A stretch of 64,000 nt of DNA, taken from positions 124,001 through 188,000 of IMG/VR virus record IMGVR_UViG_3300028840_006257, one strand, 5' to 3'. This document shows, one piece after another, positions 600-12,284 of the stretch. The notes under the pieces are model-generated. The model did no database searches, had not been told where the DNA came from, and was given only the letters and a program-made list of their open reading frames with translations. A program made the position numbers and the translations under genes. Every line of letters begins with the position of its first letter. The stretch's first letter is position 1.

Positions 600-3500
600 A
601 TGAGCGTCCTCGGATACGGACTTGAGCCCTTCGGCATGGGCCCCTACGGGGGGCTCGGCGGGGTCATGCTTCCGGCCATGGTGCCTCCTCTAGGAGGCTA
701 CGGAGGCTACGCCTACGGGACGAGCTCGTACGGGTCGCTCGGCAGCTTCGGATCGCCTGCCATCGGGACCACGAGCGGCTTCGGCGGCTGCGGCTACGGG
801 ATCAACTCCTACGGCTGCATCGGCATGCTCACGATGCCGCCCATGGTCATCTCGGCCGTGTCGATCACGGGGTTCATCATCGAGGTGTTCTTCTCGAACG
901 AGATGTCGCCCGACGCCGACCTGTTCGACCCGGCAAGCTACACTCTGACCGACCTGGCCGGGGCGGCTCCGGCGACGGTCCTGAGCGTGCAGTCGGGCGT
1001 CCCCGGCGTGTGGGGACCTACCTCGGTGCTCCTGCACCACACGGGGACGACGCTGGGCGGCCTCTATCGCGTGACCGTGGTCGGCCCGCGCGACGTCTCC
1101 GGAGTTGAAATCGCCGCGTACGCGCCGCTCAACGAGGCCGACTGCCTCTGCAAGGGGGAGCCGCCGCCCTTCACGATCACGCCCACCTCGGGTACGGACC
1201 TGCTCTACGAGTTCGAGCAGGACATGCTGCCCGAGAGCGGGTTCACCCCCGGGATCCTCCAGACCGACGCCTACGACTACGAGACCGACTATCCCCAGAA
1301 CCTGATCCCGGTCGCCGTGGACCATCCGTTCGGCGGGAACCCGAAGCACGTGGAGGTGGAGGTCGTCGGGATGACGGCCGCCGAGTACCTCGGGATCGTG
1401 AGCTCCGCGACGGCCATCGACTACGACGGGACCTACCTGCCCGACGACCCCCAGGCGGACTTCACGGGGCAGCAGGTCGGCACCGGCACGACCACCCAGG
1501 GCACAGACGAGGTGCTGCTCTCGAGCGCGGTGGGGTTCTCCTACGGCTGGCGGTTCCTCGACACGTCGGGGCGCGTGCTGCCGAACTCGAGCTACCGCGT
1601 GGACGTCACCTTCGACGCGTCGGCCGCCGTCCTCCTCGATCCGGCCCCCGGGGTCGACCCGGTCGTGCTCGTGCTGATCAACGACGGCGCCGTGCAGGTC
1701 GAGCTGTCGTTCAAGCGCGTGGTGGGGGTGGATACCCTCGAGGTCGCCTCGGGCGCGTTCGTGGCCTCGTCGAGCATCGGCTGGACGGCCCAGGAGACAA
1801 CCGTCTCGCTCGCGCGTAACCAGAAGGCGGACACCTATACGGTGGTCGTCAACGGGGAACCCATCGTGGCGGGCCCCACCGCGAGCTTCACGGCGCCCCC
1901 GGGATTCCCCGCCGGCGTCCAGTTCATGGTCGATCCGAACGGGACGTACGAGGTCGTCGACCTCCCGCTCAAGGCGCTCCTGTTCACGGCGACCCAGACC
2001 GTGTTCTCCGCCGCGTGGAACTTCCTGCACAACCAGCAGGCTCCCTTCGTGGGGTCGGGCGCCCTCACCAGGGACTCGCTCCTGACCAGGAAGGGGCCGC
2101 TCGTCAAGGGGTGGGGCGATGCGACTCCGGCCACCAAGCAGGACGTCGTCGTCTACGTCAACGGGACGCCCGTGGAGGTCGACTCGGTCAACCCCTACTA
2201 CGGGCGCATCTTCCCTACCATCCCGATTCCCCTGACGCCTCCGGGGACGATGGAGGTCACGGTCGACTACATCTGGTTCCCTGCGCCGGTGATGGCGATG
2301 GCTGGGCTCAACACGCCGGGCCTCGTGCTGAACAAGTACGACTGCGGGCCGATCACCCCGACCGGCGGCAACTCTCCGGGCGTGGGACTCCCGGGAGGAG
2401 GCACCAACGGCGTGGAGCTCTCCCGCTTCCCGATGGCGGTCGTTCTCGGGCCGCGGGCCATGAGGCAGCCGCTGCTACGGAGCCCGAGGTTCGTCGCCTA
2501 CCAGAAGCCGTACACGGCGGCGCTGAACAGTCCGACCACCCTGCTCCTGAACCGGGACCCGCACCAGGTCGCGCTCTCCAGCGAGCACAGGGACGCCGAG
2601 GGCGTCGTCGTGTTCTACGAGGGGACCGAGGGGCCCACGGTCGCCGACCCGCCGTGGACGCTCGTGGGCACGGAGGGGCTCGACGACGCGGACATCGCGG
2701 GCCCCGATCCCGTAAACCCCTCGAACGTGGATCCCGACTCCACCCTCGACGGGGTGTTTCAGGTCTACAAGACTGTCAGCGGCCCCTACGGTGAGGGCGA
2801 CGTCACCTTCTACACGCAGGAGATCGACACGAGTTTCCCGTCCTCCATCGTGATGGTCGTGCGCTTCCAGGTGCTCCCCTCGGAGACCGAGGACGGCGAT
2901 GCCATCCCGATTCCCGACGGCGTCTTCGTCGGAGTAGGTTTTGGCTGCCACACGAACAACCACCTCTACCTGGTCGGCTGTCTCCGCGTCAACGACCTGC
3001 AGCACGTCGGGATGCTGGTGGACCCGTCCTTCCCCGAGCTGCTCGACTCGTGGCAGGTAGCCTACGCGACGGACGTCGAGGTGCTCGACGCCACGACGTG
3101 CCAGGCCCAGAGCGACGAGCTCCCCCAGCTCGTCAGGGAGCGCCTGATCTCCGATGACCTGGTGCGTTTCCAGATCTTCGCGGGAACGCAGACCGGAGTC
3201 TACGAGGTGGTCGAGATCGTCGACCAGACGGACGGCACCAGCACGATCACCCTCTCTCCGACGACGCCGTTTCCCGCTGATCCGGCCCTGTACGGCAACC
3301 GCGACTTCACGGTCTACTTCGAGTCCAGGTGGGACGGCGACGGAGAGCCCGGCAGGCCCGCGACGTACCGTCTGGTCGTGAAGAACGACGTCAAGCTGGT
3401 GCCCGACGGCCTCGCCGAATTGTACCTCGGCGCTTCGTTCTCCGGGCGCGCCCTCGAGCTGGCGGGCGCACCTCCGTTCGCCATCCCGCCCGACGGCGTC

Positions 3501-6116
3501 CTGCTGTACCCTACCGGGAACGAGGGCGAGGTCTTCTGGGGTTCGCTCGACCGCAGGGCGAGCAACCTGAGCAGCTGGTCCTTCGTCAGGTACGCGCTGG
3601 ATCCCGGCGCCACGACCCTGAACTTCCGGCAGATCGTCGTCGCGGCCGAGATGAACGACCTGCCCGAGGACGATCCGAACAATATCTGGTTCCTGACGCA
3701 GGAGTTCGGGTCGCGGATCATCGACTTCACGGGCGACCAACTGCTCCTCAAGGCCACCTCAGCCAACAACCAGGCGGGCGTCGAGGACCAGGACCTGACG
3801 ATAGGCTACGCGAGGGTAGAGCCGTTCCTGACGCGGCGTCTCGCCATCGACATGGATAGCACGTTCCAGGTGGACAGCGGCGTCCTCGGAGCGGGGGACC
3901 TCCTCTACGTGGTGCAGGACGGCCTGAGGGAGGTGCGCCTCGCGACCCTGCTCTACGAGGAGACCGGGACGGAACGCCAGCTCCTCGACCTGCCGAACCT
4001 CTCGCTCTCCGGGCTCCTCCTCCCGGACGAGCAGGGATGGTCGAGGGGCGGCGAGCTCACGACGGAGCGCGTTCAGGGTCAGAGGCTCCAGTTCGTCCAG
4101 GCGACGGGCGAGACGCTCGTGTACGCGCTCGTGCTCGTCGAGACGGGAGGAGATCCTCCGCCCGGCGACGGGCGCGTCATCGAGTCGAGGATCCGCGTCG
4201 CCAGCGTGACCACGACGGACCCGGCCGGAGACACCGGGATCTTCTTCGGCTCCGACGTGGGGCCCATCGGGTCTGCTAGGGGCGTCGGCCTCCAGCTCCG
4301 CGCGGCGACGGGCGGCGTCGCGGACCAGGTGTTCCTGTTCTCTCTCGAGACGGGACTCGAGGTCGCGGCGTTCGACGTGGGCTGGAACGACGGAGAACTT
4401 CACACCTATCGAGTCATCGCGGACGCGGACGTCTCCACCGTGTCCGTGGTGGTGGACGACGTGGTGCTGGGCACGGCCGACCTGACGCTGTTCGCCTCCT
4501 CGTCCACGGACACCGAGGCGACGCTCGGCTTCGCGAACACGCTCACGGCCTGCTTCGTCGAGGTCGAGGACTACTCGGTCGTGGTGCTGCCGCCGAGCAC
4601 GGCGGGACGCACGCTAGGCGTCTACGTCCGGGGGGACTCCGACGACATCGACAGCTGGAGGATTCCGCGGACGGACTTGCTCGACGTGCCGAACTCCGAC
4701 CTCTCCGCCGTGGTCGAGCAGATGGACTGGCGGCAGCGGGTCCGCGTCCGTATCCACCGAGACCCGGGCTGGGGCGTGACGATCCTGCGACCGGACCTCC
4801 CGCCGCCGCCCTACTTCACGGGAGACTTCGCGACGCAGTTCACGGAGCCGAGCGCGGGCTGGATCAACGTCGAGTACCGCGAGCTGCCGCGCGCGCCCTC
4901 CAACGCCGCCCTCGGCCAGGTCTCCTTCGGTGCCCTCGATCCGCGGTCGATCACTCAGCTCCGCATCGACGAGGTCCGGTACCGGATCTACAGGTACGCC
5001 ACCGAGGACATCATCATGCCCCCGCACATGGTGCTGAACCAGCAGAACGTCGTCTCGAGCGGGGAGTTTCACGAAGACATCACGGTCGAGCACATCACCG
5101 TTACCTCGACCGACGCGAGGACGGTCGACCTCAAGGGGGGCAACGTCACGGCCGACCGGGTCTTCCAGCTCGTCTCGCTGAACGAGGACGGTACCACGAC
5201 GACCTACCTGCCGGGGTCCTTCGAGTTCGACCGTGACGCCCAGGTCGTTACCATCACGTCCACGCAGTTCCTGGGTTCGGCCTTCGCCGCCGACGACCAG
5301 CTCGACGAGGACCCGGACGTGGTCGACGACGGCTTCCCGCACGAGGACCTGGTCGCGCCCGCGTCTCCGGTCGACGGCATCTCGGACCCGGATCGACGCG
5401 TCGACGCGCTCAACCCGATCAAGATCCCGGTGACGGTCTCGTTCGCTCCGGGGAGGCCCATCACGAAGACCTACGTGTGCTCGCAGCCACTCCTCGACGG
5501 GACGACCCTGCTCAACCAGGACACCCCGCCGTTCGAGACCTCTCAGGTCGGGACCGACGTGCGGTTCCTGGCCTGGGGTTCGCGGATCAACGACCCGAAC
5601 GACGTGCTCAACACCGACCCCGACTTCATCCTGAACGACCCGTTCCGGTTCATCGACTTCAGCAGCGACCCGAAGATCCAGTACGAGCAGATCGATTTCT
5701 GCGAGGTCTCGGAGGGCGAGGAGAACCGTCTGTCCCCGTTCTGCGACGGCGGCTATCCGGGGGCGGCGGACGCGGGCCATCCGGGCAACGATCCGGGCGA
5801 CATCGGCAACGGACCTGTCGAGATCGGCCTCGAGGGTATCGCCTTCACGGAGACCGAACCCATCAGTTTCAATGACGGTCCGTCGGACGGCTTCGGGGGT
5901 TTCACGAGCACCACCTTCCTCAAGGCCAGCGGGGGCGACGCCCCGCCCGGGGGCAACCTCGGAGAGGCCATCCTCTTCACGCCCCTGGGGCCCGAGACGG
6001 TCACTCCGGAGAGCCTCGACGGTAGCGTGGGTTGGAGCGTGATGGGGCAGCTCTACGACACGACCACGAACACCCTCACCCTCCTGTTTTTCGGCACTGA
6101 GTCGCTTGGTCCTTAG
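600..6116 (+). CDS. Giant (1838 aa) putative virion tail/baseplate protein with Ig-like and lectin-like beta modules
   Basis: Long ORF with GC3-rich codons. N-terminal G[YF]GxxxYG repeats, an Ig-like stretch (IIEVFFSNEM...DPASYTL) and a LamG-like strand (LHTYRVIAD...VSVVVDD). Function inferred from size and context. Confidence 0.55.
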   Translation: MSVLGYGLEPFGMGPYGGLGGVMLPAMVPPLGGYGGYAYGTSSYGSLGSFGSPAIGTTSGFGGCGYGINSYGCIGMLTMPPMVISAVSITGFIIEVFFSNEMSPDADLFDPASYTLTDLAGAAPATVLSVQSGVPGVWGPTSVLLHHTGTTLGGLYRVTVVGPRDVSGVEIAAYAPLNEADCLCKGEPPPFTITPTSGTDLLYEFEQDMLPESGFTPGILQTDAYDYETDYPQNLIPVAVDHPFGGNPKHVEVEVVGMTAAEYLGIVSSATAIDYDGTYLPDDPQADFTGQQVGTGTTTQGTDEVLLSSAVGFSYGWRFLDTSGRVLPNSSYRVDVTFDASAAVLLDPAPGVDPVVLVLINDGAVQVELSFKRVVGVDTLEVASGAFVASSSIGWTAQETTVSLARNQKADTYTVVVNGEPIVAGPTASFTAPPGFPAGVQFMVDPNGTYEVVDLPLKALLFTATQTVFSAAWNFLHNQQAPFVGSGALTRDSLLTRKGPLVKGWGDATPATKQDVVVYVNGTPVEVDSVNPYYGRIFPTIPIPLTPPGTMEVTVDYIWFPAPVMAMAGLNTPGLVLNKYDCGPITPTGGNSPGVGLPGGGTNGVELSRFPMAVVLGPRAMRQPLLRSPRFVAYQKPYTAALNSPTTLLLNRDPHQVALSSEHRDAEGVVVFYEGTEGPTVADPPWTLVGTEGLDDADIAGPDPVNPSNVDPDSTLDGVFQVYKTVSGPYGEGDVTFYTQEIDTSFPSSIVMVVRFQVLPSETEDGDAIPIPDGVFVGVGFGCHTNNHLYLVGCLRVNDLQHVGMLVDPSFPELLDSWQVAYATDVEVLDATTCQAQSDELPQLVRERLISDDLVRFQIFAGTQTGVYEVVEIVDQTDGTSTITLSPTTPFPADPALYGNRDFTVYFESRWDGDGEPGRPATYRLVVKNDVKLVPDGLAELYLGASFSGRALELAGAPPFAIPPDGVLLYPTGNEGEVFWGSLDRRASNLSSWSFVRYALDPGATTLNFRQIVVAAEMNDLPEDDPNNIWFLTQEFGSRIIDFTGDQLLLKATSANNQAGVEDQDLTIGYARVEPFLTRRLAIDMDSTFQVDSGVLGAGDLLYVVQDGLREVRLATLLYEETGTERQLLDLPNLSLSGLLLPDEQGWSRGGELTTERVQGQRLQFVQATGETLVYALVLVETGGDPPPGDGRVIESRIRVASVTTTDPAGDTGIFFGSDVGPIGSARGVGLQLRAATGGVADQVFLFSLETGLEVAAFDVGWNDGELHTYRVIADADVSTVSVVVDDVVLGTADLTLFASSSTDTEATLGFANTLTACFVEVEDYSVVVLPPSTAGRTLGVYVRGDSDDIDSWRIPRTDLLDVPNSDLSAVVEQMDWRQRVRVRIHRDPGWGVTILRPDLPPPPYFTGDFATQFTEPSAGWINVEYRELPRAPSNAALGQVSFGALDPRSITQLRIDEVRYRIYRYATEDIIMPPHMVLNQQNVVSSGEFHEDITVEHITVTSTDARTVDLKGGNVTADRVFQLVSLNEDGTTTTYLPGSFEFDRDAQVVTITSTQFLGSAFAADDQLDEDPDVVDDGFPHEDLVAPASPVDGISDPDRRVDALNPIKIPVTVSFAPGRPITKTYVCSQPLLDGTTLLNQDTPPFETSQVGTDVRFLAWGSRINDPNDVLNTDPDFILNDPFRFIDFSSDPKIQYEQIDFCEVSEGEENRLSPFCDGGYPGAADAGHPGNDPGDIGNGPVEIGLEGIAFTETEPISFNDGPSDGFGGFTSTTFLKASGGDAPPGGNLGEAILFTPLGPETVTPESLDGSVGWSVMGQLYDTTTNTLTLLFFGTESLGP

Positions 6117-6157
6117 CGGTTTTCGTTCTATCAGACGGCGCCTAGCAGGGAGATCTC

Positions 6158-6349
6158 ATGCCCACCATCATCCGTGAAAATCTCAGGCCAGCCCGCTCCG
6201 GCTACAAGTTCGGACTGGTGCAACGCTGCACGGATGTCGTCCCCCTCGCGATGACGCGGGGACGCGTGTTCATCGAGATGCGGGATGCCCGCACGGGTGA
6301 CGTCGAAGAACGGTATTGGCTGGACGACCTCAAGGAGTCTGATGTCTGA
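6158..6349 (+). pseudogene. Orphan N-terminal fragment of the tail/baseplate gene completed at 7441-8040
   Basis: 63-aa ORF with SD-like GGGAG. RGRVFIEMRDARTGDVEERYW aligns with KGEFFLTMTDVRTGEVQIQW of the 7441 ORF; the ORF ends where the endonuclease begins. Confidence 0.6.
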
Positions 6350-7460
6350 AGTCTCGCAAGCGGAGCTGAGGCGTCGCCAAAAAATCTCAGACGCCTTGAA
6401 GGGACGCAAGAAGGGACCGCGCAAGCGCGTTTCCGAGGAGGCTAGGAAGGCCCATTCCGAAATGATGAAGGTTCGATGGGCCGACATGTCCGACGAAAAA
6501 CGAGCCTGCATTGGACAACGGATCTCGGAATCCCTGAGCGGTAAAAAGCATACCGTGGAGCATCGAAAGGCAAATGCCGAGAGTCGGCGAGGCAAACCCC
6601 TCTCTCAAGAACAACGGAAGAAGATCTCACGGTCTCTCTGTGAAGCCTACGAGGAAGGACGACGCTCCTCGTGGAACACTGGAATGCGTGTGGGGTCTTG
6701 TTCTGAGGAGACCAAGAAAAAGATCTCTGATTCCCTTCGACGGGCGAGTCAGGAAGGACGTCTGACCCGCTGTCCTTGGAATCAAGGAAAACGGACGGGC
6801 CCGCGTCCGAAAGAGGTTCGTCGGAAGATCTCCGAAAGTTTGCGTGGGAGATCTCATTCGGTCTCACCTGAAAAGCGCGAGGCTTGGCGTCAGAAGATTT
6901 CCACAACTAAGCGAGGGGCGCGTCGTTCCGCGGAAGCCTGTCAAAAAACCTCCGAGTCTTTGCGGCGGGCATACGCGGAGGGTCGTCGCGGGATTTCCGT
7001 GAAGTCGGGCTATGGAAAGGGGAGTTACTACGATACGCCGTTCCAAGGCAAGAAATGGTTGCGATCTACTTCTGAAGTTCAGCGCGCACGCGAGTTGGAC
7101 CAGGCCGGCATCATCTGGTTCTACGAGTTACGCAAGTTCGTCGTGGAACTGAAGGGTCACAACTCCACGTACACTCCGGATTTCTGGATTGTCGAAGACC
7201 TCAAAAGAGAGGCCGTATCCTCAGCACCGTCCCTGGAGGACTTCATCAACGAGATGGAGACCTCGGGGCGTTTTCGGATCGAGGATGTGAAAGGCTGGTG
7301 GGGGCCCACACATAAAACCTTCAAGAAGATCAGCGCGTTTCAGGAGCAGTATCCGAGAGTGCCTTTCCGTATCGTGGTCCGAGAAGGTCTGTTCAGAGAG
7401 AGGGCAACACCCGGCATGCGCTGGAAAGAAGAGGAGCAACATGCAGGACAGAGCGTCTGA
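6342..7460 (+). mobile_element. Free-standing homing endonuclease: NUMOD3-type repeats plus C-terminal PD-(D/E)XK nuclease domain
   Basis: Start refined to ATG 6342 (AAGGAG at 6332-6337). Repeated K(K/R)IS(E/D)SL(K/R)G and PWNxG motifs; C-terminal RSTSE...IWFYE...YTPDF...EDVKG. Visibly lower GC than the flanks. Confidence 0.8.
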
Positions 7461-8040
7461 GCCCCGATTCCCCGGCACGCTGAAGGGAGAGTTTTTCTTG
7501 ACGATGACCGACGTGCGTACCGGGGAGGTCCAAATCCAGTGGAGGTGTCCCCAAGTTGTCACTCTCGACGCCTCGCTCCTGGTCGCGGCGCTCACGAAGG
7601 ACCCGAACGAACCCGCCCACGGGATCAACATGCTGGCCGTCGGGACGGGGGCCCTCGGCGCGATCCTGAATCCCGACAAGCCGACGAACGAGCAGAGGCG
7701 ACTCAACAACGAGATCGCCCGCAAGCCGTTCTCCGAGACGACCTTCCGCGACGCCAACGGAGCCGCGGTCGCGATCAGGACCAACGTCGTCGACTACACC
7801 ACCATCTTCGGCGAGTCCGAGGCCGTCGGGTCCCTGAACGAGATGGGGGTACTTTCCACGATCAGCGACAACGTCGCCATCAAGAATCCCAACCCGAACT
7901 TCGCCGGTCAGGGCGGCGAGCCCTACGATCCCACGATCGACACGTCGGAGTACGACATGTTGTGCAACTTCCTGACCTTCGGCGTGATCACGAAACCCGC
8001 GACCTCGATCCTGACCATCACCTGGCGACTTTCGTATTGA
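7441..8040 (+). CDS. Phage tail/baseplate-associated protein (199 aa)
   Basis: SD GAGGAG before ATG. MLAVGTG...EIARK...GESEAVGSLNEMG...TFGVITKPATSILTITWRLSY matches the pattern of conserved myophage tail/baseplate proteins. Confidence 0.65.
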   Translation: MQDRASEPRFPGTLKGEFFLTMTDVRTGEVQIQWRCPQVVTLDASLLVAALTKDPNEPAHGINMLAVGTGALGAILNPDKPTNEQRRLNNEIARKPFSETTFRDANGAAVAIRTNVVDYTTIFGESEAVGSLNEMGVLSTISDNVAIKNPNPNFAGQGGEPYDPTIDTSEYDMLCNFLTFGVITKPATSILTITWRLSY

Positions 8041-8047
8041 GGAACCG

Positions 8048-8830
8048 ATGAAGTCCTGTCCGGCATGTGGTGAGAAGGACGTTCTGAAGTTCGGCAAGAA
8101 CAAGCGCCGAAAAGACGGCCTTGCGTGCTACTGCCGTGCGTGTTCGCGTCGGAAGGCTAGAGAATACGCTCGTACCCCGGCACAGCAGAAGAAACGGAGG
8201 GTTTACTACGAAGAGAATCGCGAAAAGCTCCTGGGACAGGCGCACGAGCGTTGGCGTGTCAGCAAACATCGCTACGAAGCAGCACGACAGAAATGGGCGG
8301 CCGACAACAGAGAGAGGATGCTCGGTTACTATGCCGCGAAAGCGCACGCCCACCAAGAGTTCGTGGATGCAATCAAAGACGGAAAAGCCTGTTTTGATTG
8401 TCACCGGATGTTCGCGCCCTACGTCATGGAATTCGACCATGTCCGTGGCACGAAACGCTGGGCCATAGGCAAGATGGCGAATCATCGGCGAGAACGTGTC
8501 CTTGAGGAGATCGAGAAGTGCGACCTCGTCTGTTGCGTCTGTCATCGCATCCGCAGTCACGCACGCCGGACACCCTCTAAGAGCCCCCGGCTACAAGCGT
8601 TTCATGAGTGGCTAGCCCCCCTGAAGGCGGGCCCGTGTCATGACTGCGGGCGACGGTTCCCACCTCCAGCCATGGACTTCGACCATGTTTCAGGCATAAA
8701 GGTTGCTGGCATTGCGCAAATGGCTTTCTGGGGTCGTGAGAAAACGTTAGCGGAGATCGCGAAATGCGAGCTTGTCTGCGCCAACTGTCACCGCGAACGG
8801 ACGGTATTCCGTCTTTGGAGGGCAGCCTAG
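8048..8830 (+). mobile_element. Free-standing HNH endonuclease with two tandem HNH domains
   Basis: N-terminal CxxC...CxCxxC finger, then two copies of CxDC...(E/D)FDHV...KC(D/E)LVCxxCHRxR. Low GC. Confidence 0.8.
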
Positions 8831-8831
8831 A

Positions 8832-11800
8832 ATGCCGACCCGGCCCAAATTCTTCCCGTCCTCCGTCAGCCGGTACCTCGACCCGAAGGAGCGTGCCTGG
8901 GACACCGTCATCGCGCTCAAGGGGAAGCTCGTCCTCGACTCCGAGAAGATCCTCCAGCAGGACGTGCGCGAGCTCGACCGGATGCGCCAGCTCGCGCGGA
9001 CGGTCCCGTCGGGTTGGATTCGAGGGCAGTCGCGCGGTGACTCCTACGACGACTTCAGCTACGACGCACCGTGGCTCCCCGGGCCGGTCCTCAACCCCGA
9101 CTGGACGGCCAACGCCTTCCACATGCGGAAGGTCCAGGCGCTCGTCGGGGGCCTGCTCGTGGACGTAGAGTATACGAACACGGACACGCCGGGAGACAAC
9201 CTGATCGTCCTGGACTCGCCGACGGTCTTCGATGGCACGCCGCCGTCGGTCAAGCGCACGGACTTCGTGTTCCTCGAGGTCTGGCTCGCGCTCGTCAGCG
9301 AGAGTCCCAACGCGAAGGGGTCCCTGACCGTCAGCGATCCCGTTGCCTCCGCGCCGGGTGACACGGTGCTGGTCGACGGAGTGACCCTCACGGGCGTGCT
9401 GGTCGTCCCCGCACCGAACCAGTTTAGGATCTTTCCCGGCAGTCCGACCAACACCGCGGCGAGCATCGCGACGCAGCTCAACGCGGCGGTCGCCTCGGTC
9501 AACTGCGTGGCGGACGCTAACATCGTGAGGATCACGGCGGCGCAGGCCGGAGCGGCGGGCAACGCCATCACGCTGAACAGCAGCAACCCGGTCGCGATCC
9601 TGGCATCTGGCGGCTTCCTCACGGGAGGCGCGGACACGCCGAACAAACCGACCCAGGACCTGATCTACCGACACGGCAACGTCCTCTCCTCCGCCGCCGT
9701 CGCGCTCCCCGACGACATCGAGGATCCCATCGTGGGGGCGGAGACCACCAGCAGGGTCCAGGTGCAGTACCGCATCCGCCACACCGGCGCGGCCGAGGGC
9801 GTGGACTTCAAGCTCGAGTGCGACGGCTTCTCTAACCCGGCGGTCCTCGGGCAGGGAACTCAGTCGGCCCCGGTGACCGACTACCCCTTCGTTCCCGCCG
9901 ACCTCAAGACCGTCCTGCTGAACTCGGACGCCCGTGACGGGGTGGCCGGTCCCGAGATCGGCTACGGCATCCTGGACAACGGGCTCTGGATCGCGGGCGA
10001 CGGGACGCAGGCGAGCGCCACCGCGCTGGGAACCGTCGACGGATTCTCGTACGCCGTCCCGATCGGCTTCGTGTTCCGGCGCAACGACGCCACGCCCGGG
10101 ATCGGGTTCGACCCGCGCACGAACTCGAACGGCGGACTCCTGGCCAACCATGCCGCCCACGCGAACGTCAACCTGTTCGCCAGCGTTCCGGTCGGCGAGT
10201 CCGACCGCCCCGACGGTCTCTTCGCGGACGCCATCGCGGACACGGACGTGATGGACCTGCGCAGGCACGTGAAGTTGACGGGCCAGGATCTCGGTGCCGA
10301 ACTCCAGTTCCAGATGCAGGCGCTCCAGGACGGGGACTACCGGACGTGGGCGATCGACACGGCCTCGAAGCAGATGCTCGGCAACGGCTCGGGCGACGTG
10401 TCCACGCGGAACCTGGTCGCGAACGAGGTCGGACGCACGCTAGCGAAGGGCGGCACCGCGCCCCTCTCCGGGGACACGACCAGGGGCGAGACGATCCGCA
10501 ACTTCGACCACTTCGCCCGACGTTTCGGCGATCAACCCGTCGTGGAGCGCGTCGTGCTGGAGCTCTACGCGACGGACGACCAGGTCGGGCCTCCCGCACA
10601 TCCTGGAAAGTACGTCGTGCGTCCGGGCTACGCGGTCGCCTTCAGCGGGTGGGCCGAGGGGGACGAGATCAACATCGACCTTCTGGAACTCAACGCCACC
10701 ACGCTGGGCGACTTCGACCCCAACAACGTCGTTTCCGTACCGGGGCCACCCCCGACGGGAACGGTGCTCGACTACGCTCCTCCGGGAACGACGATCACCG
10801 ACGTCCTCTCCCTCTACCACGACGACGGCAATTTCAACGTCGCGGTGGACCAGACGGCGAAGCCGACGACGATCATCGGGCTCGGGACCTCGCACGTCCA
10901 GATTACCCTCGACCAGAACCCGACGCAGGTAAACGGCGGACTCCCGGTGGCCGACCACGACATGGTCGGCACGAGCGGCACGGGTGACGTGGGTTCGCAG
11001 CGCAGGATCTTCGTCGAGCTCGAGGTGACCTACCCCATCGGCGTCGGGACCACGGACACGCCCGACCTCGAGCTCTTCCCCGACACCACGGGCTGGCCCT
11101 ACCGGGCGATGATCGAGAACTGGCTCCCGACGGGCCCCGACCAGCGGCCGCTGGACATGGAGGACCGACGCGCCCCCGAGTTCCGACAGGGATTCCGCGA
11201 GGTGGGGATCGAGTACGTGGCGAACGATCCGACGGGGGGCGGAGGCCATGCCGGCGTTCCCATCGGGACGCTCACGCCCGAGACGGTCGTCAGCCGCGAT
11301 CCTCTGAGCTTCGTGCTCGGGCGGCGTTTCTGGGGCGACTCCGTCACGTCCGTCCTCGTCACGGACGCGAACGACACGAACCCCCGCGACGTGGACGATC
11401 CCAACACCCACTACGGCGCCTCCTCCAGGCTCGTGGTGCTCAACAACACCGGCATTCCCCCGGCCGTCCCGCTCTCCGGAGCGGGCCAGACCCTCTGCGA
11501 GGTGAGGTTCTTCGCGCAGGACGCCATCCCGAACTTCGGCCCCCCGGGTGGCGGCTACCAGCAGGCGATTTACTTCCGCACGAACGCCCCGCAGACGGCG
11601 GGCGTCAAGGAGGGAACGATCAGCACGGTCGTCACGGATTTCCCGTACTCGGGCTCCCTCGGGCCGATGCCCGCGACGCTGGAGGTCGAGCCGCTGTACC
11701 TCTCGGGCAACGTCTGGACCGGCCAGGTCGGCATGGGAAGCGTCGAGCTTCCCTTCCCCTACTACGCCCCGCTCGATCAGCTTCCCGTCAACGACGGCCA

Positions 11801-12284
11801 GACGGAGGTTCCGCCTCCTCCACCTCCCGACCTCTTCCCGGGCGAGCACTACTTCGCGGCCACGGCCACCATCGCCATCGACGACTTCGACGCGGCGGTG
11901 GGGACCCTCACGCTCCAGAGCCTCGTGCCCGCCGAGGGGAGTCAGCCGTGGACGGTGGGAGGGGTGCCGACCACGGACGTGCCCTACAAGGACGCGGAGT
12001 TCCGGGCCGTCTACCCGGTGATAAACCGCTCGGGACACCGCCCGACCGCGATGGGACAGCCGACGAGCAACGTCGTGCGCCACAAGGTCTTCGTCCCGTG
12101 CCTCGTCCGCGCGATGCAGGACAGCGTGTTGTTCCGCAAGGACGAGCTCCTCCTGCTCGTGATCACTCGGTGGGCGCGGCTCGACGACCACAACGTCGTG
12201 GAGTTCGCGGACGCGGGGAGCACGACGGGGGTGGGCGTGTTCCGCACCAAGAACCTCCTCATGACCGCGGGGAACCAGGAGTAG
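8832..12284 (+). CDS. Large virion protein (~1150 aa), DUF6519-like N-terminus, paralog of 19847-25495
   Basis: Start refined to ATG 8832, just after the HNH stop. SRYLDPKERAWDTVIALKGKLVLDSE resembles the DUF6519-type N-terminus; several motif blocks are shared with the 19847 ORF. Confidence 0.6.
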   Translation: MPTRPKFFPSSVSRYLDPKERAWDTVIALKGKLVLDSEKILQQDVRELDRMRQLARTVPSGWIRGQSRGDSYDDFSYDAPWLPGPVLNPDWTANAFHMRKVQALVGGLLVDVEYTNTDTPGDNLIVLDSPTVFDGTPPSVKRTDFVFLEVWLALVSESPNAKGSLTVSDPVASAPGDTVLVDGVTLTGVLVVPAPNQFRIFPGSPTNTAASIATQLNAAVASVNCVADANIVRITAAQAGAAGNAITLNSSNPVAILASGGFLTGGADTPNKPTQDLIYRHGNVLSSAAVALPDDIEDPIVGAETTSRVQVQYRIRHTGAAEGVDFKLECDGFSNPAVLGQGTQSAPVTDYPFVPADLKTVLLNSDARDGVAGPEIGYGILDNGLWIAGDGTQASATALGTVDGFSYAVPIGFVFRRNDATPGIGFDPRTNSNGGLLANHAAHANVNLFASVPVGESDRPDGLFADAIADTDVMDLRRHVKLTGQDLGAELQFQMQALQDGDYRTWAIDTASKQMLGNGSGDVSTRNLVANEVGRTLAKGGTAPLSGDTTRGETIRNFDHFARRFGDQPVVERVVLELYATDDQVGPPAHPGKYVVRPGYAVAFSGWAEGDEINIDLLELNATTLGDFDPNNVVSVPGPPPTGTVLDYAPPGTTITDVLSLYHDDGNFNVAVDQTAKPTTIIGLGTSHVQITLDQNPTQVNGGLPVADHDMVGTSGTGDVGSQRRIFVELEVTYPIGVGTTDTPDLELFPDTTGWPYRAMIENWLPTGPDQRPLDMEDRRAPEFRQGFREVGIEYVANDPTGGGGHAGVPIGTLTPETVVSRDPLSFVLGRRFWGDSVTSVLVTDANDTNPRDVDDPNTHYGASSRLVVLNNTGIPPAVPLSGAGQTLCEVRFFAQDAIPNFGPPGGGYQQAIYFRTNAPQTAGVKEGTISTVVTDFPYSGSLGPMPATLEVEPLYLSGNVWTGQVGMGSVELPFPYYAPLDQLPVNDGQTEVPPPPPPDLFPGEHYFAATATIAIDDFDAAVGTLTLQSLVPAEGSQPWTVGGVPTTDVPYKDAEFRAVYPVINRSGHRPTAMGQPTSNVVRHKVFVPCLVRAMQDSVLFRKDELLLLVITRWARLDDHNVVEFADAGSTTGVGVFRTKNLLMTAGNQE

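What the first reader, a model, noticed from the sequence alone, without database searches (positions are those of the whole stretch)
6158..8040. Homing endonuclease splits a tail gene and appears to bring a replacement 5' end
The 63-aa ORF and the N-terminus of the 199-aa ORF encode the same segment (RGRVFIEMRDARTGDVEERYW vs KGEFFLTMTDVRTGEVQIQW) on either side of a NUMOD3/PD-(D/E)XK endonuclease. The second copy has its own SD/ATG. Its codons look AT-richer up to ~7560 (TTT TTC TTG, CAA GTT GTC ACT), like the endonuclease, before switching to GC3-rich usage. Inference: the mobile cassette rescues the essential gene it invades by supplying a new N-terminus and destroys its own target site.
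Basis: partly seen in the sequence, partly recalled or inferred. Interest (0 to 1): 0.62.

Follow-up and report, generated by a model that had tools for sequence, protein, structure and literature searches.

The report
Endonuclease cassette replaces gene's front end
A selfish endonuclease gene sits inside a baseplate-type structural gene of a huge phage and carries its own copy of the gene's first structural segment, so a complete protein is still made; this trick is known from fungal mitochondria and appears here as a conserved family in phages.

Summary
Thirteen related loci without this endonuclease carry one uninterrupted ~217-codon gene at this place. In the window it is cut just before the invariant VTLDA codons by a 372-aa endonuclease (NUMOD3 repeats plus a T7-endonuclease-I-like PD-(D/E)XK domain). 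The 63-codon ORF is the native 5' end (41/50 identical to the closest intact homologue). The 199-codon ORF is a mosaic. From VTLDA onward it is 94% identical to that homologue. Its first ~40 codons, which duplicate the first beta-hairpin, are only 41% identical and have lower GC3.

Every endonuclease relative of 43-50% identity found with sequence downstream (at least 15 loci) shows the same layout: N-fragment, endonuclease, C-fragment with duplicated hairpin, and overlapping stop/start codons. In 12 of 15 C-fragments the Asn next to the insertion point is Gln, against 2 of 162 intact genes. This fits target-site immunity.

No intron was detected. It is kept in every locus with upstream sequence, with dN/dS 0.11-0.33.

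Closest precedents are fungal mitochondrial endonuclease ORFs that carry a foreign gene end, and the mobE-split nrdA of phage Aeh1. Verdict: a new variant of a known kind. Cleavage, homing and the N-fragment's role are untested.

The parts
600..6116 (+). Upstream 1838-aa gene of unknown family, used as the left synteny anchor of the locus
   Evidence: Its C-terminal 400 aa match directly upstream of the intact homologue in L002-L013, L014 and L016. No Pfam or PHROG match.
6158..6349 (+). N-fragment ORF (63 codons): the displaced native 5' end of the split gene, comprising a disordered N-terminal arm and the first beta-hairpin
   Evidence: 82% identical over residues 1-50 to intact homologue P0003, E 7e-30. 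An equivalent 59-66-codon ORF occurs in the other endonuclease-bearing loci with upstream sequence; L017 has a longer (~85-codon) open frame there and L037's copy is cut by the contig end. dN/dS is 0.11-0.33 in four locus pairs.
6299..6349 (+). Tail of the N-fragment, probably the left end of the cassette (donor-type codons, the endonuclease's ribosome-binding site AAGGAG at 6332-6337, and the stop overlapping the endonuclease ATG)
   Evidence: Similarity to P0003 ends after residue ~50. GC3 is 0.64, like the endonuclease. The tail shares a W..LKES motif with the N-fragment of L020. A relative's contig in run X1 stops matching at 6298.
6342..7460 (+). Free-standing homing endonuclease gene (372 aa): NUMOD3 repeats plus a C-terminal T7-endonuclease-I-like PD-(D/E)XK nuclease domain
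   Evidence: Pfam NUMOD3 3.8e-9; phrog_314 'homing endonuclease'. The family profile matches PDB 1m0d at E 1.4e-3 over the catalytic motifs. Catalytic D/E/K columns are invariant in 23 relatives. GC3 0.61 against 0.91 for neighbouring genes. Single copy in the 213-kb record. Absent from 13 related loci.
7441..7563 (+). Cassette-borne replacement segment: own SD (AGGAG 7432-7436) and ATG, a short leader and a foreign copy of the first beta-hairpin (codons 1-41 of the 199-codon ORF)
   Evidence: 11/27 identical to P0003 here against 150/159 downstream. Nearest relatives of this segment are P0007 and the C-fragment of L023 (56%). GC3 0.75 against 0.906. dN/dS of the equivalent segment is 0.08-0.16 in other loci, so it is translated.
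7549..7572 (+). Re-created insertion or target site, carrying changes expected to block cleavage (CAA GTT GTC ACT at 7552-7563 where intact alleles have AAC GTC GTC ACG)
   Evidence: Codon alignment of nine intact alleles and nine C-fragments. Gln replaces Asn in 12 of 15 endonuclease-linked C-fragments against 2 of 162 intact genes.
7441..8040 (+). C-fragment ORF (199 codons): the complete folded domain of a baseplate/tail-fibre-type protein, lacking only the ~20-residue N-terminal arm
   Evidence: 929 homologues, mostly 214-219 aa. phrog_5417, whose profile starts near residue 24 of the full-length protein. In the AlphaFold model of full-length P0003, residues 1-31 are disordered and the fold starts at the hairpin 35-57. 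Fold matches to A511 gp105 and the phi812 baseplate arm, E 1e-4.
8048..8830 (+). Second, unrelated free-standing endonuclease (260 aa, two HNH modules) in the next intergenic slot. It is not part of the cassette but shows the locus is a hot spot for such genes.
   Evidence: phrog_2255 and phrog_3106 'HNH endonuclease', 1.6e-39. GC3 0.63. Present in L002, L003, L008, L012 and L015 and absent from L004-L007, L009-L011, L013 and L014. A relative's contig in run X2 skips 8027 to 8919.
8772..12284 (+). Downstream 1170-aa gene, used as the right synteny anchor
   Evidence: Residues 21-400 match directly downstream of the intact homologue in all related loci.

Best explanation
A site-specific, free-standing homing endonuclease cassette of about 1.26 kb (roughly 6299-7563) is inserted in a ~218-codon baseplate-type gene, immediately before its invariant VTLDA codons.

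The cassette has three parts:

1. a short left junction that closes the native reading frame and provides the endonuclease's ribosome-binding site;
2. the endonuclease gene (NUMOD3 DNA-binding repeats plus a PD-(D/E)XK nuclease related to T7 endonuclease I);
3. at its right end, its own start signals and its own copy of codons ~20-58 of the target gene, which encode the first beta-hairpin.

This copy joins in frame to the resident gene body. A 199-aa protein containing the whole folded domain is therefore still made. The re-created junction carries substitutions (Asn to Gln plus synonymous changes) that would protect it from the endonuclease.

The displaced native 5' end remains as a 63-codon ORF. 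The three ORFs overlap stop-to-start, so ribosomes that start at the native site can pass to the endonuclease and then to the C-fragment.

In the inferred homing event, the enzyme cuts an intact allele at this site during mixed infection. Repair uses the N-fragment as the left homology arm and the gene body as the right arm. Everything between them, including the duplicated hairpin, is then copied across.

Shown here: the anatomy, the mosaic, the family-wide recurrence and the selection pattern. Inferred: cleavage, homing, immunity and coupled translation.

The N-fragment is still constrained at the amino-acid level. It most likely still serves the virion as a separate arm peptide. Its role as a translated leader for the endonuclease could explain why the frame stays open, but not the low dN/dS.
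For: **Interruption.** Thirteen related loci have one intact gene at this place and no such endonuclease. In run X1 a contig is collinear with an intact allele: its two matching pieces are 310 nt apart, exactly as expected without the insert.

**Mosaic.** Identity to P0003 is 94% from VTLDA onward and 41% in the duplicated segment (p 3e-10). The 63-codon ORF holds the P0003-like version. The GC3 step fits this.

**Recurrence.** All relatives of the endonuclease at 43-50% identity lie directly upstream of a truncated homologue with the same duplication: L015, L017-L023, L036-L047, L050, L053, L056, L079, L080 and the P0125 contig. More distant relatives lie elsewhere.

**Movement.** In the pair L039/L042, synonymous-only codon differences run at 29% in the endonuclease and 32% in the duplicated segment, against 59% in the gene body (p 3e-8 and 0.007). 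The duplicated segment's distances track the endonuclease's after controlling for the body (partial Mantel r 0.36, p 0.006).

**Site immunity.** See the codon alignment. Gln occurs in 12/15 linked C-fragments against 2/162 intact genes.

**The C-fragment is a complete domain.**

**Overlapping stops and starts** occur in 11 of 11 loci examined.

**No intron** was detected.
Against: - No cleavage, homing or expression data exist. No RNA run holds the locus.
- The donor of the window's cassette is unsampled. The best match to the endonuclease is 50% identical and to the replaced segment 56%.
- Across loci the endonuclease, the duplicated segment and the gene body mostly co-diverge (Mantel r about 0.7). 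Long vertical residence may therefore be the rule and homing rare.
- One clade (L018, L021, L022) keeps Asn at the site.
- The counts for Gln against Asn are not phylogenetically independent.
- DNA of the three closest intact alleles could not be fetched, so the junctions are placed from protein alignments and GC3 only.
- If the C-fragment were fully sufficient, the strict retention of the N-fragment would be unexplained.
Confidence: 0.75

Rival explanations
1. The 199-aa protein does the whole job, and the 63-codon ORF is a functionless leftover. It persists only because insertions are young, or because the endonuclease needs it as a homology arm and translated leader.
For: Residues 1-31 of the full-length protein are predicted to be disordered. 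The distant family profile phrog_5417 starts near residue 24. The stop/start overlap with the endonuclease gives the element a reason to keep the frame open. The window's insertion looks recent. GC3 of the N-fragment is lower than in neighbouring genes.
Against: An intact N-fragment ORF is present in every endonuclease-bearing locus with upstream sequence, including L017. Its dN/dS is 0.11, 0.13, 0.33 and 0.27 in four pairs. In the three of those pairs where the endonuclease's divergence could be estimated, it has itself diverged by dS 0.45-0.67. These values are no higher than the 0.27-0.38 typical for the same region of intact genes (range 0.09-0.38). A leader or homology-arm role does not predict amino-acid conservation.
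Confidence: 0.2
2. A true genes-in-pieces arrangement produced by a local tandem duplication. Both hairpin copies would be native to this phage lineage, the endonuclease would simply sit between them, and no gene segment would travel with it.
For: In several loci (L018, L019, L021, L022) the two hairpin copies are 44-56% identical to each other, which is more than to copies in other loci. The gene body and the endonuclease largely co-diverge.
Against: In the window the downstream copy is foreign (41% against 94%), while the upstream copy is native. In L039/L042 the duplicated segment shares the younger age of the endonuclease, not that of the body. C-fragment hairpins from divergent phages share derived characters (Phe/Tyr in place of Val, and Gln in place of Asn) that are rare in intact genes.
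Confidence: 0.1
3. The endonuclease lies in a self-splicing group I intron, or the two pieces are rejoined by protein splicing. A full-length protein would then be restored, and the downstream 'copy' would be intron or intein sequence.
For: Joining the N-fragment at about codon 58 to the VTLDA codons would recreate a perfect full-length gene. Phage endonuclease genes are often intron- or intein-borne (PMC2988022).
Against: No Rfam family matches at E up to 1 in the window or up to 0.1 in eight other loci. There is no non-coding space, because the ORFs overlap. The downstream copy is under purifying selection as protein (dN/dS 0.08-0.16) and has its own SD and ATG. The endonuclease is in a different frame with its own start and stop, and no Hint/intein domain was found.
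Confidence: 0.03

Closest known systems
Mobile endonuclease ORFs of fungal mitochondria that carry a foreign gene end (Allomyces macrogynus atp6; Glomus atp6, atp9, cox2, nad3; also reported for Rhizopus atp9 and Mortierella cox2), as described in PMC3630166
   Same: An endonuclease ORF is inserted in a protein-coding gene together with a duplicate of the adjacent gene end. The inserted copy is divergent and foreign and becomes part of the expressed gene. The displaced native copy matches close relatives and lies on the other side of the endonuclease.
   Different: This case is the mirror image: the 5' end is replaced rather than the 3' end, so the element must supply start signals rather than a stop. 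The host is a huge phage and the target a virion gene. The nuclease is NUMOD3 plus PD-(D/E)XK, not LAGLIDADG or GIY-YIG. The displaced piece here is kept as an intact, constrained ORF translationally linked to the endonuclease. In the fungal cases it is often untranscribed.
[quoted passage not shown]
   Same: A free-standing phage endonuclease gene splits a conserved gene at a critical place. Sequences that arrived with the insertion compensate for the split. Both pieces are retained.
   Different: In Aeh1 the pieces do not overlap and both are needed to build one active site. Here the downstream piece holds the entire fold, and ~40 codons are present in both pieces. Assembly of the two pieces is only weakly supported here.
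T4 mobA with the gene 60 ribosomal bypass element (PMC2988022; bioRxiv 10.1101/2022.08.31.505936)
   Same: An endonuclease and an adjacent piece of sequence inside the target gene form one mobile unit. The extra sequence both preserves gene function and alters the target site.
   Different: T4 uses a 50-nt untranslated gap bypassed by ribosomes. Here the extra sequence is a translated duplicate of a structural segment with a new start codon.
Intronless homing of free-standing seg and mob endonucleases in T-even phages, with co-conversion of flanking markers (PMC2988022)
   Same: A free-standing endonuclease with sporadic distribution among relatives. Flanking host sequence is co-inherited with the element. 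The resident allele is resistant through sequence differences.
   Different: Those genes sit between genes and duplicate nothing. This one sits inside a gene at a fixed codon.

Membership tests
Free-standing homing endonuclease gene | Nuclease domain with an intact catalytic motif, plus a DNA-binding module | tested here: met
   NUMOD3 at 3.8e-9. PD...(E/D)xK columns are invariant in 23 relatives. The profile matches T7 endonuclease I (1m0d) at E 1.4e-3.
Free-standing homing endonuclease gene | Sporadic presence among close relatives, at a fixed insertion site in a conserved target | tested here: met
   Absent from 13 related loci, one with 94% identity in the gene body. At least 15 loci carry it at the same codon, before VTLDA.
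Free-standing homing endonuclease gene | History of the element differs from that of the host gene (lateral movement) | tested here: inconclusive
   Clear in the window's mosaic and in L039/L042. Across all loci, however, element and gene mostly co-diverge.
Free-standing homing endonuclease gene | Cleaves the element-free allele and spares its own | not testable with these tools
   Only indirect evidence: AAC GTC GTC ACG against CAA GTT GTC ACT, and the Gln/Asn association.
Group I intron carrying an endonuclease ORF | Conserved intron core structure flanking or embedding the ORF | tested here: not met
   No Rfam match in the window 5500-9500 at E up to 1, nor in eight other loci at E up to 0.1. 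The ORFs overlap, so no non-coding core is available.
Group I intron carrying an endonuclease ORF | Spliced mRNA joining the exons | not testable with these tools
   No RNA run holds the locus.
Intein or split-intein 'fractured gene' | In-frame Hint-domain halves at the ends of the two gene pieces | tested here: not met
   No Hint or intein family in any ORF. The N-fragment tail beyond the homology is only 5-15 residues. The start of the C-fragment is homologous to the host protein's own hairpin.
Endonuclease ORF with gene-end replacement (fungal mitochondrial type) | A duplicate of the adjacent gene end lies beside the endonuclease; the inserted copy is foreign and the displaced copy is native | tested here: met
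   downstream copy 41%, upstream copy 82%, gene body 94% identical to the closest intact homologue.
Endonuclease ORF with gene-end replacement (fungal mitochondrial type) | 3' end replaced, read in phase with the host gene; LAGLIDADG or GIY-YIG enzyme | tested here: not met
   Here the 5' end is replaced, with its own SD and ATG. The enzyme is NUMOD3 plus PD-(D/E)XK.
Genes-in-pieces (Aeh1 nrdA type) | Both pieces are needed and assemble into one functional protein | tested here: inconclusive
   The N-fragment is retained and constrained. The complex test gave only weak support: score 0.47, best control 0.00, partner pLDDT at least 47, runs agreeing in at least 62% of contacts. At a score of 0.60 or under, only 7 of the 80 solved calibration complexes passed, and so did both of the 2 mismatched pairs (out of 110) that passed at all.
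Baseplate / tail-fibre-associated protein (A511 gp105-like) | Shared fold with solved baseplate components | tested here: inconclusive
   Foldseek matches to phi812 baseplate chains and A511 gp105 at E 1e-4 to 4e-4, with TM only 0.39-0.53. BFVD hits include tail-fibre and baseplate annotations. No sequence family with a known function matches.

The most novel reading that the evidence does not exclude
The three overlapping ORFs form an obligate, co-translated module. The displaced 63-aa piece would still work in trans: its disordered arm attaches the protein to the baseplate, and its own hairpin docks onto the 199-aa piece. The duplicated hairpin would then be the 'handle' that lets a structural protein function in two overlapping pieces. 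That is a way of neutralising gene fragmentation distinct from splicing, bypassing or the Aeh1-type tails. The endonuclease would meanwhile draw its expression from the structural gene's own translation start.
Probability: 0.3. Interest if true: 0.75.

Novelty: new variant of a known kind. Interest (0 to 1): 0.64.

Why it matters
- **How a selfish gene can live inside a gene without an intron or intein.** The endonuclease carries a spare copy of the structural segment it cuts off, with start signals and a pre-mutated target site.
- **A wider principle.** Gene-end replacement was known from fungal mitochondria. Finding the mirror-image form as a conserved family in huge environmental phages suggests it is a general solution.
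- **Hidden chimeras.** It is also a way for short foreign segments to be written into virion genes, which can mislead phylogenies of those genes.
- **A testable system.** The family offers a predicted target (AAC GTC GTC ACG before VTLDA), predicted resistant variants (Gln alleles, including intact genes such as P0007 and P0257 that may record endonuclease loss or site conversion), and an unexplained retained peptide.
- **A possible enzyme class.** As far as my searches went, the NUMOD3 plus T7-endonuclease-I-like architecture has not been described as a class of homing enzyme.

Tried and rejected
- **Phage DNA search.** blastn of 5600-8900 against the 50,697 deposited phage records found nothing.
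- **Single-protein scans.** Scans of viral contigs with the endonuclease found nothing, and with the 63-aa ORF found only one distant locus. An alignment-based scan was needed.
- **A mistake corrected.** I first took L017 to lack an N-fragment because the gene caller placed a minus-strand gene there. A profile of the N-terminal arm found it at E 3.5e-9, so the inference that the N-fragment is dispensable was withdrawn. A whole-record search of L017 was not possible because the record is not held.
- **Intron, intein and split-intein readings** were rejected.
- **Expression.** No RNA run holds the locus, so splicing and expression could not be examined. Laying contigs gave only presence and two informative joints.
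- **Complex prediction** of the C-fragment with the N-fragment gave weak support only: score 0.47, best control 0.00, partner pLDDT at least 47. The N-fragment's hairpin is homologous to part of its partner, which could itself inflate the score. I do not count it as evidence of binding.
- **Distance-matrix tests** were only mildly informative because all three parts co-diverge.
Full report
**What is in the window**

Between a 1838-codon gene (600-6116) and a 1170-codon gene (8772-12284) lie four ORFs on the + strand:

- a 63-codon ORF (6158-6349);
- a 372-codon endonuclease gene (6342-7460);
- a 199-codon ORF (7441-8040);
- a 260-codon double-HNH endonuclease gene (8048-8830).

The 372-aa protein matches Pfam NUMOD3 (3.8e-9) and PHROG families annotated as homing endonuclease or endonuclease. 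A profile of it and 22 relatives matches T7 endonuclease I (PDB 1m0d, E 1.4e-3) across the PD...(E/D)xK motifs. Those columns are invariant in the family.

The window lies in a 213-kb viral record that CheckV estimates to be 40% complete. Relatives lie on contigs of 311-619 kb. This is a huge phage lineage from sediment and seawater metagenomes.

**Is the gene really interrupted?**

The 199-aa protein has 929 homologues, nearly all 214-219 aa long. In twelve related viral loci, plus L014, there is a single uninterrupted ~217-codon gene between the same two large neighbours. None has a NUMOD3 endonuclease.

The 63-codon ORF is the first 50 residues of that gene: 82% identical to P0003, E 7e-30. 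The 199-codon ORF covers it from about residue 20 to the end.

In sequencing run X1, which also holds the window's phage, a lower-depth 723-nt contig matches 6270-6298 and 7834-7872. The two pieces are 310 nt apart, exactly the spacing of an uninterrupted allele (arithmetic in the notebook).

**The replacement 5' end**

Against the closest intact homologue, the 199-codon ORF is 150/159 identical from the VTLDA motif onward, but only 11/27 in the duplicated segment before it (Fisher p 3e-10). The P0003-like version of that segment is the one in the 63-codon ORF.

GC3 agrees: 0.75 in codons 1-40 against 0.906 afterwards (p 0.014), 0.61 in the endonuclease and 0.91-0.92 in neighbouring genes. The last GC3-poor codons are CAA GTT GTC ACT at 7552-7563.

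On the left, similarity to P0003 ends after residue ~50. The remaining tail of the 63-codon ORF has GC3 0.64 and shares a W..LKES motif with the N-fragment of another endonuclease-bearing locus, L020. The foreign tract therefore runs from about 6299 to about 7563.

**This is a family, not a one-off**

Searching with the endonuclease, and scanning viral and metagenome contigs with its alignment, gave about 20 relatives at 43-50% identity. In every case where downstream sequence exists, the relative sits immediately upstream of a truncated (185-204 aa) homologue of the same gene. These are L015, L017-L023, L036-L047, L050, L053, L056, L079, L080 and the P0125 contig. More distant relatives (41% or less) lie elsewhere.

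Every such locus with upstream sequence has an N-fragment: a 59-66-codon ORF in most, a longer open frame in L017, and a copy cut by the contig end in L037. Each ends a few codons after the point just before VTLDA. Each also has a C-fragment that begins 7-17 codons before the hairpin.

Stops and starts overlap in all eleven loci examined. The N-fragment stop and endonuclease start overlap by 1-14 nt, and by 8 nt in six loci. The endonuclease stop and C-fragment start overlap by 4-20 nt. This points to one ancestral junction and to coupled translation.

**Does the duplicated segment travel with the endonuclease?**

- The window's mosaic says yes.
- In the pair L039/L042, codons differing only synonymously make up 29% of conserved codons in the endonuclease and 32% in the duplicated segment, but 59% in the gene body (p 3e-8 and 0.007). 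The endonuclease and the segment are therefore younger than the body they sit in.
- C-fragment hairpins from phages whose gene bodies are only ~50% identical share derived residues that are rare in intact genes.
- A partial Mantel test gives a modest independent association of the segment with the endonuclease (r 0.36, p 0.006). All three parts also co-diverge strongly (r about 0.7), so long vertical residence is common.

**Target-site immunity (inferred)**

Intact alleles of the window's group read GAC AAC GTC GTC ACG CTC GAC GCC at the insertion point. The window's downstream copy reads CCC CAA GTT GTC ACT CTC GAC GCC.

The Asn codon is Gln in 12 of 15 verified endonuclease-linked C-fragments. 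The other three, a single clade, keep Asn but change the next residue. Asn is kept in 160 of 162 intact homologues (p 3e-14, lineages not independent).

The two intact genes with Gln (P0007 and P0257) also carry the cassette-type hairpin. They are candidates for endonuclease loss, or for repair templated by the downstream copy.

**What the protein is**

An AlphaFold model of full-length P0003 (pLDDT 78) has a disordered arm (residues 1-31). It then has a beta-hairpin (35-57), which is exactly the duplicated segment, followed by a helix beginning at TLDA. The C-fragment therefore contains the whole fold. The distant family profile phrog_5417 likewise starts near residue 24.

Foldseek finds A511 gp105 and phi812 baseplate-arm chains (E 1e-4, TM 0.4-0.5) and viral models annotated as tail fibre or baseplate. 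'Tail gene' is plausible but not proven. 'Essential' is an assumption.

**The 63-codon ORF is not a relic**

Its dN/dS over residues 1-50/55 is 0.11 (L021/L022), 0.13 (L039/L042), 0.33 (L020/L079) and 0.27 (L023/L080). In the three pairs where it could be estimated, the endonuclease itself has diverged by dS 0.45-0.67; in L023/L080 it was too diverged to estimate. The same region of intact genes typically gives 0.27-0.38 (range 0.09-0.38). So there is no relaxation.

Frequent re-seeding from intact alleles could mimic this. The comparable divergence of endonuclease and N-fragment argues against that.

A complex prediction of the C-fragment with the N-fragment gave weak support only: score 0.47, best control 0.00, partner pLDDT at least 47, runs agreeing in at least 62% of contacts. 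At a score of 0.60 or under, only 7 of the 80 solved calibration complexes passed, and so did both mismatched pairs that passed at all. I treat it as inconclusive.

**Rivals**

No group I intron is detectable in the window or in eight other loci. No non-coding space exists. The downstream hairpin copy evolves as protein, with dN/dS 0.08-0.16. No intein domain is present. Splicing cannot be excluded without RNA, and none is available.

**Comparison with what is known**

- The closest precedent is the mobile endonuclease ORF of fungal mitochondria that inserts with a foreign carboxy-terminal gene segment and leaves the native one behind. Examples are Allomyces atp6 and Glomus atp6, atp9, cox2 and nad3 (PMC3630166). 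The phage case is its mirror image at the 5' end, uses a different enzyme family, and keeps the displaced piece under constraint.
- Phage precedents for endonuclease-split genes are mobE in Aeh1 nrdA, with element-derived tails (PMC3045599), mobA with T4 gene 60, and seg in gene 43 (PMC2988022). None of these involves duplicated coding sequence; the review contains no occurrence of 'duplicat'.
- I found no description of this arrangement in phages. The library is incomplete, so this is absence of evidence only.

**Verdict**

It needs correcting on what is replaced (the first hairpin, not the extreme N-terminus) and on the fate of the displaced piece.
- Novelty: a new variant of a known kind.
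- Confidence in the cassette model: 0.75.

Noticed in passing
window 8048-8830 (+): A second, unrelated endonuclease (260 aa, two HNH modules, GC3 0.63) fills the next intergenic slot. It is present in L002, L003, L008, L012 and L015 but absent from L004-L007, L009-L011, L013 and L014. In run X2 a relative's contig skips 8027 to 8919. It appears to be an independent free-standing homing endonuclease gene.
   Followed up: partly
L023 5046-6302; L042 3286-3852; P0003 contig (324-aa ORF): The same slot downstream of the split gene holds other endonuclease-like ORFs in other phages. L023 has a 418-aa ORF with NUMOD-like repeats and a PD-(D/E)XK-like motif. L042 has a 29%-identical relative of the 372-aa enzyme. 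The P0003 contig has an ORF with a faint ROS_MUCR hit. The locus seems to be a hot spot for such genes.
   Followed up: no
L014 1075-1734 (P0007); P0257: These are the only two intact full-length homologues with Gln at the insertion codon and the cassette-type hairpin. They may record loss of the endonuclease by recombination between the two hairpin copies, or break repair templated by the downstream copy, giving a resistant endonuclease-free allele.
   Followed up: partly
L017 4496-6480: Here the N-fragment, endonuclease and C-fragment unit lies on the strand opposite to its usual large neighbours, so the module is inverted relative to them. The N-fragment ORF has a long tail overlapping the 5' part of the endonuclease frame, and the automatic gene call missed it.
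   Followed up: partly
window 6158-6307: Codons 1-50 of the N-fragment have GC3 0.78 against 0.92 in the upstream gene (p 0.003), although their protein sequence is native-like and constrained. This could be a 5'-end effect or relaxed codon selection. It is unexplained.
   Followed up: no
L079 4048-5121 (-): A gene with a Cas12f1-like TNB (TnpB-type) domain lies two genes downstream of the split gene in this relative. It is another mobile-element-associated nuclease in the same neighbourhood.
   Followed up: no
window 7400-7460: The window's endonuclease has a ~20-residue C-terminal extension absent from all relatives. This extension overlaps the ribosome-binding site and first seven codons of the 199-codon ORF, giving the longest overlap (20 nt) of any locus.
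   Followed up: no
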